Shown here: positions 31,319-35,430 of the stretch, piece after piece
Layout of the letters: each line of letters starts with the position of its first letter
Position numbering within the stretch: position 1 is the first letter of the stretch
Sequence record: MK250019.1
Direction: 5' to 3' (one strand)
DNA length: 64,000 bases
Made by a program: the position numbers and the translations under genes
The notes under the pieces: model-generated
Seen by the model: the letters and a program-made list of their open reading frames with translations, nothing else
Told to the model about the DNA's origin: nothing
The model's database searches: none

Positions 31319-32320
31319 ATGGAAATTAAATAGTTTACAGATGATGCATTAAAACATGTATTTGAAATATGTACATCAACAATGAATATATTGGAATTAT
31401 TAGGTTATGAACCATATAAAATAAGAGGATAGAAATGTAAAGAAATATTAAAAATATATGCTAATTAGATTGGTGTCAATATAGAAGATTATAAATCAAA
31501 TAATATAAAATTTAGGATATATAATGAATTACATCCTGTATGTAAAACATGTGGTAAGGGCTTAACATATTTTCAATATAAGCAAAAATAGGAATTTTGT
31601 TGTTCATCATGTGCAGCAACTTATAATAATAAACATAGGATATTATCAAAAAATATACTTAAAAAATTTTCATAGGAACAAAACATAGAAGAACTATAGT
31701 CTAGAAAACGAAATTATGTATTAAATACAGAGTTAATTAAACAAGGTAAAATCTTAAATGATAAAAATATTACATATAAAGAACATTATATAGATATAAC
31801 CAAACTTGGCGTACATATATGTCAAGTATGCGGAAATACATTTATACCTTCAATTACAGTAAAGGGAAATATATCTAAGTCTACTACATGTTCTGATATA
31901 TGTCATAAATAGTTAGTAAGTGAAAAATCAAAATAGGCACTTTAGAAACTTATTAATGACGGTCGGCATAAAGGCTGGATGTCTAGAAATATTACAAGTT
32001 ATCCAGAAAATTTTTGGATTAATGTATTAAATAATAATCATATAGTTTTTACATGTGAATTTAAAGTAAAAAAACGTTGTGGATATTATTATTTCTTGGA
32101 TTTTTTTATAGAGCATAATGGATATAAAATTGATTTAGAAATAGATGGACAACAACATAAGTATAGGAAAGAACATGATATTAAGAGAGATGAATATCTT
32201 ACATCATTAAATTATATCGTTTATAGGATTGAGTGGAATACTATAAATACGGAAAATGGAAAATTATTGATGAAAGAAAAAATTGATAATTTTTTAAATT
32301 GGTTTAATAATTTAGAGTAA
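31319..32320 (+). CDS. zinc-ribbon + DUF559/Vsr-like PD-(D/E)XK endonuclease inside the tRNA array (333 aa, about 9 TAG)
   Basis: CKTCGK...FCCSSCAA, CQVCG...CSDIC and YFLDF...LEIDGQQH...DIKRDEYL..L.Y.VYRIEW. A TAAACT-N17-TATAAT promoter lies at 31266. Confidence 0.82.
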
Positions 32321-32336
32321 AATTATTAAATTATAT

Positions 32337-32410
32337 ATGGTAGTAGTTCAATTGGTAGAATGCTAGTTTTGGGAACTAGTGGTTTGCGGGATCGTGCCCC
32401 GCCTACCATA
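32337..32410 (+). tRNA. trnP: tRNA-Pro(TGG)
   Basis: Acceptor ATGGTAG/CTACCAT and anticodon arm CTAGT-TTTGGGA-ACTAG. The T-loop ATCGTGC is atypical. Confidence 0.85.
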
Positions 32411-32528
32411 CAGAATCGATAAATCTGATATTATCCTTACGTAATTAATCAGATTTAAAACTTTAGATAGTAAGGTATCTATATAATGGAAGTTCACGCC
32501 TAAGGGAAGATTTATACATTATAATTTT

Positions 32529-32603
32529 ACTCTGTTAGCTCAATTGGATTAGAGTAATTCGCTACGAACGAATAGGTTAGGAGTTCGATTCTCTTACAGA
32601 GTA
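32529..32603 (+). tRNA. trnR: tRNA-Arg(ACG)
   Basis: Acceptor ACTCTGT/ACAGAGT, anticodon arm ATTCG-CTACGAA-CGAAT and T-loop TTCGATT. Confidence 0.92.
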
Positions 32604-32610
32604 CAAATAT

Positions 32611-32683
32611 ATCTCTATAGTTTAAGTGAATAAAATAGGATTTTCCTAAATTCCAGTTACTGGTTTGATTCCAGTTAGAGATA
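32611..32683 (+). tRNA. trnR: tRNA-Arg(CCT), slightly degenerate
   Basis: Acceptor ATCTCTA/TAGAGAT. Anticodon loop TTCCTAA sits in a stem with one T-T mismatch. T-loop is TTTGATT. Confidence 0.72.
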
Positions 32684-32749
32684 CATTAATTATTTTGATA
32701 AAAAATAAGAGAAATATATAGACTTTTATTTGATTTCAACATATACATT

Positions 32750-33215
32750 ATGTTAATTGGATGAACAGTTAATAATTAATAATTAATAATAAAAATACTA
32801 TTAAAATGTGGGGTTTTGAGTGCCCATCATTTAAAGAGTTTCGAGAAGAAGACATTGTATGTAAAAGCATTAAGTTTCATTTAGCTGATGAAATGTAGTC
32901 AAGCGTGATGGTATCGATGTACATGGGTCCATCCGTATAACTTCGGGGAATCATAAGCATTAATCTTGGAGAGTACAGTTTTTAGTCTGAAATGACGAAT
33001 TTTCCTACTGGTTGCTCAATATGACATTAAGAGTCGGAGATAATTATTTGTAAGTTCCACAATTACAAGAGGAAAATGGAATTAAGTTGTCGGAATAACG
33101 TGATTATTCTATGTGTGAGTAAGAGAATGAAAGTAGCATTATATGTATGGTGTACGTATGCATATAGAAACAAAGCAAATAATAGCCCTTAGAGAATTTG
33201 CCGAGAAAAGGACAT
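32750..33215 (+). ncRNA. candidate large structured non-coding RNA
   Basis: GC-elevated tract lacking any convincing ORF, with several hairpins and a nested helix. A TAGACT-N17-TATACA promoter-like site lies just upstream (32719). Confidence 0.4.
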
Positions 33216-33233
33216 TAATAGTATTTATAATTT

Positions 33234-33392
33234 GCGGGTATAGCACAATGGTTAGTGTGTCGGTCTTCCATACAAGAATAAACTTGTAAAATTAAACTAT
33301 ATGCTAATAATAAATGTGGTATTATAAAATAAGAGTTCGAATCTCTTGCATATAGCAAACCGAAAATGTCGGTTCGATTCCGATTACCCGCT
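33234..33392 (+). tRNA. trnG: tRNA-Gly(TCC) interrupted by an approximately 87-nt intron after position 37
   Basis: 5' exon GCGGGTA..TCGGT-CTTCCA. The 3' exon A-ACCGA..GTCGG-TTCGATT-CCGAT-TACCCGC-T gives a canonical cloverleaf once 33271-33357 is removed. Confidence 0.88.
33297..33356 (+). ncRNA. D-armless tRNA-like element nested in the tRNA-Gly intron (TGT pseudo-anticodon)
   Basis: CTATATGC/GCATATAG acceptor-like stem, ATAATA-AATGTGG-TATTAT hairpin and AAGAG-TTCGAAT-CTCTT T-arm. Confidence 0.6.
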
Positions 33393-33692
33393 CAAAGATA
33401 AAATTAGGTATACATAGTTTTGTATCGAAGCTTTATATTACCATTAGTTGTAATATTCAAATCGTTCGTTGACATGGTTATTCCGTGATGTTAGTAGTAA
33501 GTTATAATTAATTTATAGCAAACGGAATATTAATAAAAACGTACTCGGCGTTTAAGTTGAATGTACCACGCTGCCCGTATTGTTGACATTTAATTAAGTA
33601 TTTAATTAAGTTGAAACATATGTTTAAAAAACTTATGGTACCACGAGTGTTTTCTACGTCGTTTCACTCATTTTTTGGATATAATAATATAT

Positions 33693-33826
33693 GAGAGTCA
33701 TAACAGCAAATTTAGTTCTATTGTTTATTGGGATAACATAAGACTCTTGAATCAATTATATTATGGGAGATATTACAGCAAATTATTATTTAGGATCATA
33801 CTTTTAATATGAAATTCTTGTCTCCT
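33693..33826 (+). repeat. two tandem approximately 60-nt stem-closed elements sharing ACAGCAAATT
   Basis: GAGAGTC-ATAACAGCAAATT...GACTCTT (33693-33748) and GGAGAT-ATTACAGCAAATT...GTCTCC (33766-33825). Confidence 0.6.
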
Positions 33827-33834
33827 GTTTATTT

Positions 33835-33914
33835 GGGTAAATGCCTGAGTGGTCGAAGGGAATGATCTGCAAAATCATTATTATACGTCGTGTGTTCGAA
33901 TCACACTTTACCCT
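33835..33914 (+). tRNA. trnC: tRNA-Cys(GCA) with extended variable region
   Basis: Acceptor GGGTAAA/TTTACCC, discriminator T, anticodon arm ATGAT-CTGCAAA-ATCAT and T-arm GTGTG-TTCGAAT-CACAC. Confidence 0.88.
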
Positions 33915-34241
33915 CTAATATAAAATATTTCCGTGGTATACAGCACGTAAAAAGAGGTTGACTTGTATATTCTATAGACCTACTGTATAATAATATATAT
34001 GATGTATATGTGAAACACCATGTTCTATTAAGAGTTCATTAACTGAGGTTAATTTTGAATTGCACTGATATTAGATGCATAATATATAATGAATATAACG
34101 ACGGTACTGTGAAATGACTATTATTTTTAGTTGCTTGGAAACGGCGTACGAAGTTTTTATAATAGTGGAAGTAATGATAAAACAGTTAAATGTAAATCTT
34201 TCTGAGACAATGGGGACAACTTGTAGTAAGAGAGTATTTTT

Positions 34242-34345
34242 GTTGATATAGTTTAATGGGAAAACACCCAAATCCCAGGGATAAGAGATAATACTTTGAA
34301 ATAGGTATTAGAAGATTTTAGATGGTTCGATTCCATTTATCAACT
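34242..34345 (+). ncRNA. tRNA-like RNA with canonical acceptor/D/T arms and an aberrant, expanded anticodon region
   Basis: GTTGATA/TATCAAC acceptor, GTTT-AATGGGA-AAAC D-arm and GATGG-TTCGATT-CCATT T-arm. No canonical 5-bp/7-nt anticodon arm is present. Confidence 0.65.
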
Positions 34346-34355
34346 CAAATTAATG

Positions 34356-34475
34356 AAGTGTGTAGTTTAATTGGTAAAATATCCTTTGAATAGGACTGTG
34401 CGCAGATAGAACATAATGTTAGTCATATTAATCGCATTATTGATAATGATGTTGGTTCGATTCCAACGACACTTC
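34356..34475 (+). ncRNA. tRNA-like RNA with canonical D/T arms, truncated anticodon hairpin and long insert
   Basis: AAGTGT/ACACTT acceptor, GTTT-AATTGGTA-AAAT D-arm, TCCT-TTGAAT-AGGA hairpin, a 50-60-nt insert and GTTGG-TTCGATT-CCAAC T-arm. Confidence 0.65.
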
Positions 34476-34761
34476 CTAATAAATAAAAAGATCTCGGTAA
34501 TTAGATAAAACATTATATGAGTGAAGCAACTCACCATAACTGCAGATAAATGAGTGAGGGACATAAGAGTGTATGAAGAAAGATGGACTATGGACACCAC
34601 CATATAATTGCGTTTTCAATAATAGTAAAGTAAACTTTAGTATAAGTTCCATTAACGCTAAAATAGAAACATTGTTATTGAAGTCTACTATGCGTGCGAT
34701 GGTTGAATGAAACCATTGTAGTTCTAAGGCATTGTAAAACGTTTTATTTATTAATTTTTAT

Positions 34762-34835
34762 GGCGAGATAGCTTAGTTGGTCAGAGCGCAGGATTCATAT
34801 CCCTGAGGTCGTGTGTTCAAATCACACTTTCGCTA
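34762..34835 (+). tRNA. trnM: tRNA-Met/Ile2 (CAT)
   Basis: Acceptor GGCGAGA/TTTCGCT, anticodon loop TTCATAT and T-arm GTGTG-TTCAAAT-CACAC. Confidence 0.9.
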
Positions 34836-34862
34836 CTATTATTTTTTGATTGTTTATTTTTA

Positions 34863-34898
34863 TAAGAGGTATATCATTTTTTGGTATATCTCTTTTTT
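34863..34898 (+). terminator. intrinsic terminator closing the tRNA array
   Basis: AAGAGGTATATCA / TGGTATATCTCTT plus a T-tract. Confidence 0.7.
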
Positions 34899-34913
34899 AT
34901 TTAGGAAATAATG

Positions 34914-34950: not shown

Positions 34951-35430
34951 ATGAAGAAATATAAAGTATATCAACTTCGTAGAGAAAACGAAAATATAAT
35001 TGATGATTATCATGAATCATATGATGCAAAAATGAAAGTTATTGCAGAATATGAGATTTCATCTGATAGAAATGATCCAGTTATTATATCAGAAGATATA
35101 TGACATATGTGTAATGTTCATTGTTGGGATCATACATGGTCTGATGGACAAGTTGTTAAACGAGATGATATTACATTAACACCTACATCTGATTTTGATG
35201 GATTTGTTAATAGTGATATTGTAGTTGAAACTGTAAATGGATTATATCTAGCAGAATCATGTGGATTTATGAAGGTGGATTCATTGAATTATGCTATGCA
35301 TAGAATTACTGTAAGATTCCCATTTATCTCTTATTATGATATAAGAAATAAAGAAGATTTTAATGAAGATTTACTTCGTGATATTCGTAATGAAATTCAG
35401 AAAGAATATCAGAAGAGAATTGAAGAGTAA
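34951..35430 (+). pseudogene. hypothetical gene with an in-frame TGA at 35101 (nonsense allele, sequencing error, or two coupled ORFs)
   Basis: ATG 34951 and track ORF 35107 are in the same frame, separated by TGA-CAT. Confidence 0.5.

What the first reader, a model, noticed from the sequence alone, without database searches (positions are those of the whole stretch)
32719..33215. Candidate large (about 400-450 nt) structured ncRNA with its own promoter inside the tRNA array
Seen: GC clearly above the flanks and no convincing ORF. Helices are TTTCAT/ATGAAA (about 32875-32893), ATTTTCCT/AGGAAAAT (about 33000/33069) enclosing TTGTAA/TTACAA, GAATAA/TTATTC and TATATG/CATATA, with possible end pairing AATGT/ACATT. 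A class II promoter lies upstream. I cannot see tmRNA, RNase P or group I core motifs. Established: large ornate RNAs (GOLLD, ROOL) occur in phage tRNA clusters. Inference: a new or divergent large ncRNA.
Basis: partly seen in the sequence, partly recalled or inferred. Interest (0 to 1): 0.7.

Follow-up and report, generated by a model that had tools for sequence, protein, structure and literature searches.

The report
Conserved structured RNA in Lak megaphage
A roughly 440-base stretch between two tRNA genes of the giant gut phage Lak-A2 is a conserved, heavily transcribed, protein-free RNA that folds into many hairpins and matches no known RNA family; what it does is unknown.

Summary
The window is Prevotella phage Lak-A2 (MK250019.1). 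The finding is real, but its limits shift to about 32789-33233, + strand.

- **Position and conservation.** The element lies between tRNA-Arg(CCT) and an intron-bearing tRNA-Gly(UCC). It is single-copy and sits at the same locus in all 19 distinct Lak A/B/C-like homologues found. These are 88-100% identical, while neighbouring tRNAs and spacers are about 67-85% identical in most comparisons.
- **Not coding.** No ORF is conserved under table 11 or TAG=Q.
- **No known family.** Three variants gave no Rfam hit at E<=10, and ARAGORN found no tmRNA.
- **Structure.** About ten helices keep their pairing through substitutions. One 9-bp hairpin varies at six pairs with none broken. A terminal helix joins the two ends. 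Wobble-type changes fit only the + strand. The overall fold is unresolved, and folding energy alone is not significant.
- **Expression.** Animal-gut metatranscriptome contigs cover it at depths of 369 and 1083, too deep to be carried-over phage DNA.

Devoto et al. had noted "highly expressed intergenic regions" in Lak phages without defining any RNA.

Best reading: a lineage-specific stable structured ncRNA made with the tRNA array, its 3' end probably cut by RNase P. The function and the claimed promoter are unproven.

The parts
32789..33233 (+). The whole element: about 440-nt conserved non-coding unit (candidate stable structured RNA)
   Evidence: The block of 88-100% identity in 19 distinct homologues starts at about 32792 and ends at about 33228. 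RNA contigs span 32789-33093 (depth 1083) and 32751-33232 (depth 369). No Rfam hit.
32793..32809 (+). P1, 5' strand of the terminal helix (AAATACTATTAA, 2-nt bulge, TGT)
   Evidence: Pairs with 33212-33226 as 12 + 3 bp. L023 has A>G here, giving G.U.
33212..33226 (+). P1, 3' strand (ACA, TTAATAGTATTT). It ends 7 nt before tRNA-Gly +1.
   Evidence: L049 has A>G here, giving G.U. Both P1 changes are wobble-compatible on + and would be C.A on the - strand.
32811..32825 (+). H1: GGG/CCC hairpin with a variable loop
   Evidence: The stem is invariant. The loop differs in sequence and length (7-9 nt) between clades.
32875..32893 (+). H2: 7-bp hairpin TTTCATT/GATGAAA
   Evidence: A-U changes to G-C in 6 sequences and U.G to U-A in L023, with no break.
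32907..32933 (+). H3: GATGG/CCATC with a 17-nt loop
   Evidence: G-C changes to G.U twice. A possible inner pair 32915-32925 switches C-G to U-A in the B clade (by eye).
32941..32971 (+). H4: 12-bp bipartite hairpin with a tetraloop
   Evidence: The loop reads AUAA, GUAA, GCAA, ACAA or AAAA. The closing C-G becomes U.G in L048. Two G.U/A-U switches occur. One U.C mismatch appears in LakB2 and L023.
32985..32996 (+). H5: GUC/GAC stem with invariant loop UGAAAU
   Evidence: L025 has GGU/ACC, so two pairs are changed on both sides. L049 has one C.A mismatch.
32999..33077 (+). Central domain: candidate helix 32999-33006/33070-77 enclosing H6 (33048-52/33064-68)
   Evidence: The 8-bp helix never varies except for a terminal A.C in L049. 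In H6, U-A becomes U.G in 8 sequences. RNAalifold offers competing long-range pairings to 33175-33200. Unresolved.
33026..33098 (+). Internal repeat ATTAAG-N2-3-TCGGA-(G)ATAA, two copies (33026-33045 and 33081-33098)
   Evidence: These are the only two matches to ATTAAG.{2,4}TCGGA in the 64-kb window.
33092..33110 (+). H7: GGAATAA/TTATTCT hairpin, loop CGTGA
   Evidence: Invariant except A-U to G.U in L021.
33111..33139 (+). H7b: hairpin whose stem sequence differs between clades
   Evidence: The stem reads AUG(U/C)/GCAU in clade A, UUGGU/ACCAG in B, L047 and L049 (L048 not checked), UUGAU/AUCAA in L025, and UGAUUAUU/AAUAAUCG in L023. Shuffled segments give a terminal helix of >=5 bp in 19% of cases and >=7 bp in 1.3%.
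33141..33165 (+). H8: 9-bp hairpin ATATGTATG/TATGCATAT
   Evidence: 6 of 9 pairs vary across the 19 sequences (A-U/G-C/G.U, U-A/U.G and others) and none is ever broken.
33150..33184 (+). Segment homologous to a promoter-like box plus leader in distant Lak-like phages
   Evidence: The 17-mer AAACAAAGCAAATAATA and the upstream GTGTA..TGCAT are shared with L036:9176 and L040:9180. There they follow a terminator hairpin and precede an ATG. Chance expectation is about 1e-5 by my own estimate.
32685..32788 (+). AT-rich (14% GC) upstream spacer with conserved motif AATATAGACTTTTA (32715-28). Possible promoter or processing region.
   Evidence: The motif is shared by Lak-A, Lak-B and L025 but lies at a variable distance from the element. 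RNA depth rises across this region in X13. No promoter consensus found.
33234..33392 (+). Downstream tRNA-Gly(UCC) with an ~88-nt insert. Its 5' end would define the element's 3' end through RNase P.
   Evidence: Rfam tRNA at 54.3 bits with an 89-nt insertion in the anticodon loop. The insert is absent in Lak-A1 and in the X12 strain.

Best explanation
The region encodes a lineage-specific, stable, highly structured non-coding RNA of about 440 nt on the + strand of Lak megaphages.

**Shown**
- It is non-coding.
- It is under stronger purifying selection than most of the neighbouring tRNAs and spacers.
- Its substitutions preserve base pairing in about ten helices, in a way that fits only the + strand.
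- It is abundant in RNA libraries.

**Inferred (biogenesis)**
- It is transcribed with the tRNA array, either from a start in the AT-rich spacer just upstream or by read-through.
- Its 3' end is released when RNase P cuts at +1 of tRNA-Gly, 7 nt after the terminal helix.
- The 15-bp terminal helix joins the 5' and 3' ends and shields them from exonucleases, so the RNA accumulates above its neighbours.

**Inferred with low confidence (function)**
- It acts in trans as a folded scaffold or protein-binding RNA in the phage's tRNA and translation programme.
- The duplicated AUUAAG..UCGGA module and the invariant UGAAAU loop are candidate contact sites.
- It would be analogous to, but not homologous with, the large ornate RNAs found beside phage tRNAs.
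For: **Identity and context**
- The window matches MK250019.1 at 100%. There is one place per record in all 15 Lak genomes of the phage collection.
- TAG=Q usage is evident in the long ORFs and is reported by Devoto et al..

**Conservation**
- Lak-A vs Lak-B: 91-92% across the element. The combined upstream-tRNA-plus-element HSP is 80% and downstream segments are 76-85%.
- L025: 87-89% in the element against 67-80% in most flanking segments, with one 74-nt piece at 90.5%.
- Devoto et al. give only 61-65% ANI between A1 and B over a 70-kb region.

**No coding**
- The ATG-32806 frame is shifted by indels in LakB2 and L023.
- The ATG-33076 frame hits TGA after 4 codons in B, L023, L025 and L047-49.

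**Structure**
- H8: 6 of 9 pairs vary and none breaks.
- H2: A-U to G-C. H5: two double changes. H7b: four different complementary stems. P1: two independent G.U-type changes.
- For 32864-32999, 98.6% of cells are paired. Three pairs changed on both sides, against 1.1 +/- 0.4 in shuffles (1/500). Slid controls give 31-54% paired and no compensation.
- Whole-element column shuffles refolded by RNAalifold: 4 compensatory pairs vs 1.2 +/- 1.0 (1/80), and energy -78 vs -64 +/- 5.
- Reading the same structure on the - strand breaks 22 of 24 variable pairs.

**Expression**
- Contig depths are 369 (X12) and 1083 (X13) over the element, in runs of 348 and 401 million letters. A 540-kb genome at that depth would need 0.2-0.6 Gb, so this is local RNA, not DNA carry-over.
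- In X13 the window-like strain reads 12.6 upstream and 143 downstream.

**Novelty**
- No Rfam family at E<=10 for three variants. No tmRNA by ARAGORN.
Against: - Folding energy of the single sequence is no better than dinucleotide shuffles.
- All homologues are at least 88% identical, so covariation rests on few independent events.
- One-sided wobble changes are no more frequent than in refolded column shuffles: 16 vs 14.4 +/- 2.6.
- The long-range helices predicted for the 5' domain accumulate mismatches. H5 and H4 each show a mismatch in some sequences.
- In the L023 comparison the downstream kilobase is about as conserved (88%) as the element.
- The RNA data are assembled contigs. They show no strand and no true 5' or 3' ends.
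- Contig ends at 32789 and 33232 could be assembly-graph branch points, where strains diverge at the edges of the conserved block. The high depth partly sums several strains.
- One pig run (X17) covers 33151-34670 at about 4000 but nothing of 32789-33150. Some variants may therefore lack, or have diverged in, the 5' three-quarters.
- More distant Lak-like contigs have tRNA arrays at the same place but no detectable homologue.
- No function or partner has been identified.
Confidence: 0.62

Rival explanations
1. It is a cis-acting processed spacer or leader of the polycistronic tRNA precursor. Its structure serves only to guide or time processing of the flanking tRNAs, for example by presenting the RNase P site of tRNA-Gly. 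The excised piece has no function of its own.
For: - It lies directly against a tRNA 5' end, inside an array closed by a terminator-like hairpin at 34864-94.
- The other spacers of the array are also transcribed and 76-85% conserved.
- X8 shows continuous low coverage from the upstream tRNAs into the element.
Against: - It is more conserved than the tRNAs it would serve in the Lak-B and L025 comparisons, and far larger and more ornate than known tRNA leaders.
- It is kept intact in L023, where the three upstream tRNAs are deleted.
- In Lak-B the downstream neighbour is a different tRNA-Gly sequence, yet the element is unchanged.
- Its depth exceeds that of the adjoining spacers 3- to 8-fold.
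Confidence: 0.2
2. Its main role is at the DNA or transcription level: a promoter and leader region driving the downstream tRNAs. The 3' part derives from a promoter plus 5' leader, and the rest is a long structured leader.
For: - 33150-33184 is homologous to a TAnnTTTG-type box plus A-rich leader that follows a terminator and precedes an ORF in L036 and L040.
- X17 transcripts start their match at 33151 at very high depth.
- Depth rises 11-fold from upstream to downstream of the element in X13.
Against: - In Lak A/B the box has drifted away from the TTTG consensus (TACGTATG, TACGTGTG, TGTA..). The changes keep the H8 hairpin paired instead.
- Depth is higher over the 5' part than after 33165 in X12 and X13.
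- This reading does not explain selection on the 350 nt upstream or on the terminal helix.
Confidence: 0.08
3. It is a non-autonomous mobile DNA element (MITE-like, or a homing insert) bounded by terminal inverted repeats. Its high similarity between clades reflects recent spread rather than selection.
For: - It has 15-nt terminal inverted repeats.
- The neighbourhood holds presence/absence inserts: the DUF559-type ORF 31319-32320 and the tRNA-Gly insert.
- Devoto et al. describe recombination among Lak genomes.
Against: - There is one copy per genome and the locus is always the same.
- I saw no target-site duplication.
- Substitutions are compensatory or wobble-type on one strand only.
- No empty site was seen among close relatives.
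Confidence: 0.05
4. It encodes one or more small proteins.
For: ATG-started frames of 30-44 aa (32806) and 38-83 aa (33076) exist in Lak-A2.
Against: - Both frames are destroyed in other homologues, by frameshifts in LakB2 and L023 and by TGA after 4 codons in six sequences.
- The longest stop-free runs change frame and strand between homologues.
Confidence: 0.02

Closest known systems
GOLLD and ROOL RNAs (large ornate ncRNAs of phages and prophages, often next to tRNA genes)
   Same: A large, multi-helix, protein-free RNA inside or beside a phage tRNA cluster, with function unknown. The tRNA context and phage origin of those families are from my own knowledge.
   Different: No match to any Rfam model, GOLLD and ROOL included, at E<=10. 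It is shorter (about 440 nt, against roughly 580 and 800 from my own knowledge). It is restricted to one phage lineage. Nothing is known about whether it forms oligomers.
Stable small RNAs of the phage T4 tRNA operon (species 1 and 2 RNAs)
   Same: A non-tRNA stable RNA encoded within a phage tRNA cluster and, by inference, released by the tRNA-processing machinery. The T4 facts are from my own knowledge.
   Different: About three times larger. No sequence relation has been tested or is known. Processing here is inferred, not shown.
'Highly expressed large intergenic regions' of Lak phages (Devoto et al., bioRxiv 10.1101/356790)
   Same: Same genomes. That paper reports non-coding regions of up to ~1.5 kb that are among the most expressed parts of A1 and A2.
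   Different: In the text I searched, no element boundaries, structure, conservation analysis or RNA family is given, and 'ncRNA' and 'noncoding' do not occur. This report defines one such unit.
Bacteroidetes-type promoter plus A-rich leader (TAnnTTTG box)
   Same: The 35 nt at 33150-33184 are homologous to such a unit in distant Lak-like contigs.
   Different: In Lak A/B/C the box has lost the TTTG core and evolves as the 3' strand and loop of hairpin H8. No ATG follows it.

Membership tests
GOLLD RNA | Match to the Rfam covariance model | tested here: not met
   cmscan of all 4227 Rfam 15 families at E<=10 on Lak-A2, L025 and L023 variants gave no GOLLD hit.
GOLLD RNA | Location in a phage or prophage near tRNA genes | tested here: met
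   Lies between tRNA-Arg(CCT) and tRNA-Gly(UCC) of a phage.
ROOL RNA | Match to the Rfam covariance model | tested here: not met
   No hit at E<=10.
ROOL / GOLLD | Self-assembly into a homo-oligomeric particle | not testable with these tools
   Needs native gels, SEC-MALS or cryo-EM of the transcript.
tmRNA | tRNA-like domain (acceptor stem plus T-arm) and a tag reading frame | tested here: not met
   ARAGORN finds no tmRNA in the window. No Rfam tmRNA hit at E<=10. No GGTTCGA-type T-arm in the element.
RNase P RNA | Conserved regions CR-I and CR-V forming helix P4, in the canonical order | tested here: not met
   No Rfam RNase P model hits at E<=10. GAGGAAAAUGG at 33069-79 resembles CR-I, but it lies 63% along the RNA and has no P4 partner (by eye).
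Group I intron | Interrupts a gene, with a P3-P7-P9 core and a terminal G | tested here: not met
   The flanks are spacer, not exon halves. The last base before the tRNA is T. No Rfam group I hit.
MITE-like mobile element | Terminal inverted repeats | tested here: met
   Arms 32790-32804 and 33215-33229, 15 nt, 93% complementary.
MITE-like mobile element | Multiple dispersed copies and a target-site duplication | tested here: not met
   One place per record by blastn. One significant covariance-model hit per genome in two Lak records. No duplication seen at the ends.
Stable RNA processed from a tRNA operon (T4 species 1/2 type) | Co-transcription with tRNAs and release by RNase P or other tRNA-processing nucleases | tested here: inconclusive
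   One RNA contig ends at 33232, one base before the tRNA. Contigs cannot show true ends, and assembly branch points offer another explanation.
Small-protein gene | Reading frame conserved among homologues | tested here: not met
   Frameshifts and stops in homologues.

The most novel reading that the evidence does not exclude
It could be the founding member of a new class of large ornate phage RNA that works directly on tRNAs. Two possibilities are docking tRNA elbows through T-loop-like modules such as the invariant UGAAAU loop, and helping to process the 'enigmatic' short introns at position 37/38 of Lak tRNAs, for which bacteria have no known splicing machinery. A third possibility is assembly into a multimeric RNA particle, as reported for ROOL and GOLLD. 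Nothing here excludes these ideas, and nothing here tests them.
Probability: 0.1. Interest if true: 0.85.

Novelty: new variant of a known kind. Interest (0 to 1): 0.6.

Why it matters
- **Size of the gap.** Lak megaphages (about 540 kb, amber-recoded) are among the largest phages of the human and animal gut. They have not been cultured, and 84% of their protein-coding genes are hypothetical.
- **What this adds.** Their most highly expressed regions were reported to be non-coding but were never dissected. This report gives one of them exact limits, a strand, a partial secondary structure with covariation support, and a set of 19 homologues.
- **What it enables.** The RNA can now be synthesised, probed and imaged without culturing the phage.
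- **Wider interest.** If it proves to be a functional large RNA, it joins the few bacterial and phage RNAs above 400 nt with complex folds, a class in which new biochemistry has repeatedly been found.
- **Evolution.** Part of it appears to have been recruited from a promoter-leader sequence, which bears on how such RNAs arise.

Tried and rejected
**Analyses that led nowhere**
- Folding-energy z-scores of the single sequence were uninformative on both strands.
- Generic sigma-70 promoter and terminator scans found no excess over shuffles. The only terminator-like site is at 34864-94.
- The conserved upstream motif ATATAGACTTTTAT is not a recurring promoter box in the window: 7 matches with up to 2 mismatches against 6.4 expected.
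- The 17-mer AAACAAAGCAAATAATA is likewise not a recurring motif.
- A duplex-energy scan of the element against all 50-nt tiles of the window gave no outlier in the tRNA array or the tRNA inserts. The method allows huge loops, so I dropped it.
- CATTAA looked enriched (4 in the element against 0.6 expected). One copy is not conserved and a coding window has 5, so this is not used as evidence.

**Searches for more homologues**
- Pattern scans of IMG/VR and the metagenome collection gave only near-identical Lak contigs plus chance hits (L009-L011, L014), which I discarded after inspection.
- A protein-guided IMG/VR scan found only the same three Lak contigs.
- nhmmer and covariance model R1 found nothing in the distant Lak-like contigs L034, L036 and L040, and no paralogue in two whole Lak genomes.

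**Structure**
- RNAalifold's long-range helices in the 5' domain (32838-60 / 32973-93) are rejected as unsupported. They collect mismatches and conflict with the covarying H5 hairpin.

**Alternative identities**
- The small-ORF, tmRNA, RNase P and group I readings are rejected (see the membership tests).

Full report
**Identity of the window**

The 531 bases around the finding match Prevotella phage Lak-A2 (MK250019.1) at 100%, at the same coordinates. They also match all 15 Lak genomes in the phage collection, once per genome. Lak phages read TAG as glutamine. The window shows this directly, with long ORFs carrying up to 47 in-frame TAGs, and Devoto et al. state it. I therefore judged coding potential under both table 11 and TAG=Q.

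**Check of the observation**

The region lies in a + strand tRNA array:
- tRNA-His 31177
- tRNA-Pro 32337
- tRNA-Arg(ACG) 32529
- tRNA-Arg(CCT) 32611-32684
- a 549-nt gap
- an oversized tRNA at 33234-33392
- tRNA-Cys 33835
- another oversized tRNA at 34242
- tRNA-Met 34762
- a terminator-like hairpin at 34864-94

GC is 33.1% in 32789-33232. The window average for 444-nt windows is 26.2 +/- 4.2%, and the spacer just upstream is 14.4%. No ORF above 44 aa lies within the element in either code. Two details need correcting:
- Only TTGTAA/TTACAA lies inside ATTTTCCT/AGGAAAAT.
- AATGT/ACATT is the inner end of a longer terminal helix, 32793-32804 with 33215-33226, then 32807-09 with 33212-14.

The 'class II promoter' could not be verified.

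**True limits and conservation**

Alignments with Lak-A1, C1 and B1-B3 show a sharply bounded conserved block. It runs from about 32792 (AAATACTATT...) to about 33228 (...AATAGTATTT), exactly the two strands of the terminal helix.

| Comparison | Element | Flanks |
|---|---|---|
| Lak-A vs Lak-B | 91-92% | 80% for the HSP that also spans the upstream tRNAs; 76-85% downstream |
| Lak-A2 vs L025 | 87-89% | mostly 67-80%; one 74-nt piece at 90.5% |
| Lak-A2 vs L023 | 88.6% | about 88% over the next kilobase |

Devoto et al. give 61-65% ANI between A1 and B over a 70-kb region.

I enlarged the homologue set in two ways:
- DNA pattern scans.
- Walking from neighbouring proteins to ENA and Logan contigs.

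This gave 19 distinct sequences, 88-100% identical. All are at the same locus, including L023, where the three upstream tRNAs are deleted. More distant Lak-like contigs (their neighbouring WYL_2 protein is 65-69% identical) carry tRNA arrays at the same place. They have no homologue detectable by nhmmer or by a covariance model. Two relatives lack the array altogether. The element is single-copy in two whole Lak genomes.

**Not coding**
- The ATG at 32806 opens 30-44 codons in Lak-A2. A 1-nt insertion in LakB2 and a 2-nt deletion in L023 shift that frame to an early stop. Beyond codon 30, the A and B clades are in different frames.
- The ATG at 33076 is followed by TGA after four codons in B, L023, L025 and L047-49.

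**Not a known RNA**

cmscan against all 4227 Rfam 15 families at E<=10 finds only the flanking tRNAs, for Lak-A2, L025 and L023. ARAGORN finds no tmRNA. I found no convincing RNase P, tmRNA or group I signature by eye.

**Structure**

Thermodynamics alone says nothing: z = -0.38 on + and -0.19 on -. The comparative signal is what counts.

| Helix | Window coordinates | What the homologues show |
|---|---|---|
| H8 | 33141-49 / 33157-65 | 6 of 9 pairs vary in 19 sequences; none broken |
| H2 | 32875-81 / 32887-93 | A-U to G-C in six sequences; U.G to U-A in one |
| H5 | 32985-87 / 32994-96 | GUC/GAC becomes GGU/ACC in L025; one C.A mismatch in L049 |
| H7b | 33111-39 | Four different but complementary stems |
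| H4 | 32941-71 | Loop reads AUAA, GUAA, GCAA, ACAA or AAAA; closing C-G becomes U.G once |
| H1 | 32811-25 | GGG/CCC kept; loop changes in sequence and length |
| P1 | 32793-32809 / 33212-26 | Two independent A>G changes, one on each strand, both giving G.U |

The four H7b stems are AUGY/GCAU, UUGGU/ACCAG, UUGAU/AUCAA and UGAUUAUU/AAUAAUCG.

Controls:
- For 32864-32999, 98.6% of cells pair. Three pairs change on both sides, against 1.1 +/- 0.4 in shuffles (1/500). Slid partners give 31-54% pairing and no compensation. That alignment was fitted to the model, which favours the structure.
- For the whole element, refolded column shuffles give 1.2 +/- 1.0 compensatory pairs against 4 observed (1/80). 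One-sided wobble changes are not enriched over that control.
- Read on the - strand, the structure breaks at 22 of 24 variable pairs. This fixes the strand as +, the strand of the tRNAs.

The long-range pairings RNAalifold proposes for the 5' domain collect mismatches and conflict with H5. The central domain has two competing solutions. The global fold is therefore open. An internal repeat, ATTAAG-N2-3-TCGGA-(G)ATAA, occurs twice in the element (at 33026 and 33081) and nowhere else in the 64 kb.

**Expression**

Eight runs on record as RNA hold the stretch. I laid contigs of four of them on 32300-34900, which is 2601 letters and within the operators' limit.
- **X12 (gut).** A 504-nt contig covers 32751-33232 at depth 369. 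The next contig downstream has depth 117.
- **X13 (pig gut).** A 305-nt contig covers exactly 32789-33093 at depth 1083. Upstream tRNAs of the same strain read 12.6, and downstream reads 143.
- **X8 (wastewater).** Covers the region at low depth.

At these depths a 540-kb genome would need 0.2-0.6 Gb of reads, and the runs hold 0.35-0.40 Gb. The signal is therefore local RNA, not DNA carry-over. This agrees with Devoto et al., who mapped metatranscriptomes to A1 and A2 and found some intergenic regions among the most expressed parts of the genome.

Limits of this evidence:
- Contigs give neither strand nor true ends.
- Contig breaks at the edges of the conserved block could be graph branch points between strains.
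- The high depth partly sums several strains.
- Run X17 (pig, size-fractionated) covers 33151-34670 at about 4000 and nothing of 32789-33150. Its contig continues upstream into unlike sequence that, in L013, lies next to the stretch matching window 34562 onward. Some variants may be rearranged, or may lack the 5' part.

**Origin of the 3' part**

The 17-mer at 33168-84 and the preceding GTGTA..TGCAT are shared with the distant contigs L036 and L040. There they follow a terminator hairpin, contain a TAnnTTTG box (TATATTTG in L036), and lead into an ATG. In Lak A/B/C the box has lost the TTTG core and no ATG follows. The changes instead keep H8 paired. I read this as a promoter-leader segment recruited into the RNA. 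A residual internal start cannot be excluded.

**Best explanation and rivals**

I conclude, at about 0.6 confidence, that this is a discrete, stable, structured + strand ncRNA specific to the Lak A/B/C lineage.
- It is made with the tRNA array.
- Its 3' end is probably cut by RNase P at tRNA-Gly +1.
- Its ends are locked by P1.
- I place only low confidence on its function as a trans-acting scaffold or protein-binding RNA.

Rivals:
- A purely cis-acting processed spacer (0.2).
- A promoter-leader region (0.08).
- A MITE-like DNA element (0.05).
- Small proteins (0.02).

**Comparison with what is known, and novelty**

It resembles GOLLD, ROOL and the T4 tRNA-operon stable RNAs in context only, and it fails their model-based membership tests. 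The general fact that Lak intergenic regions are highly expressed was published. This defined element, its structure and its family are not described in the papers I could search.

I rate it a new variant of a known kind: a large phage ncRNA beside tRNAs. Interest is 0.6.

Noticed in passing
window 33234-33392 (also 34242-34345 and about 34355-34470): tRNA-Gly(UCC) carries an ~88-nt insert at the canonical 37/38 position. The insert itself looks like a mini-tRNA (acceptor CTATATGC/GCATATAG, T-arm AGAGTTCGAATCTCT). It is absent in Lak-A1 and in the strain of RNA run X12. Devoto et al. call these 'enigmatic introns'. No splicing mechanism is known for them in bacteria.
   Followed up: partly
window 31319-32320: A 333-aa ORF, open only with TAG=Q (9 TAG codons), lies between tRNA-His and tRNA-Pro. 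Its counterpart in L049 hits DUF559. It is absent from Lak-B3 and L025, so it is an inserted, probably mobile, endonuclease-type gene.
   Followed up: partly
window 35104-35106 (gene 34951-35430): Lak-A2 has TGA where Lak-A1, L025, L047 and L036 have TGG (Trp). This splits a roughly 153-165-aa gene into 50-aa and 107-aa ORFs. It may be a nonsense mutation in this genome or an assembly variant.
   Followed up: partly
window 33150-33184; L036:9140-9195; L040:9144-9199: A promoter-like box plus A-rich leader sits upstream of a small ORF in distant Lak-like contigs. It is homologous to part of the ncRNA in Lak A/B/C.
   Followed up: yes
L032 and L033 (ENA contigs): These Lak-like relatives lack the whole tRNA array and several following genes. 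The upstream gene is shortened (153 aa) and is followed directly by the glucosaminidase gene.
   Followed up: no
window 32715-32728: The motif AATATAGACTTTTA, just after tRNA-Arg(CCT), is conserved in Lak-A, Lak-B and L025, although the surrounding spacer is not. Its distance to the element varies from 45 to 255 nt. It could be a processing or transcription signal.
   Followed up: partly
window 33393-33834, 33916-34241, 34476-34761: The other long spacers of the array are also covered by RNA contigs (depth up to about 4000 in run X17) and are 75-85% conserved against Lak-B. They may hold further RNAs.
   Followed up: no
L013:5489-5776, relative to window about 34562-34574: L013 carries a 288-nt insertion here. 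Its last 19 nt, together with the 8 nt that follow, reappear joined to window position 33151 in an RNA contig of run X17. This hints at a rearranged variant or a recombination at the short repeat CATTATA-TGTA.
   Followed up: partly
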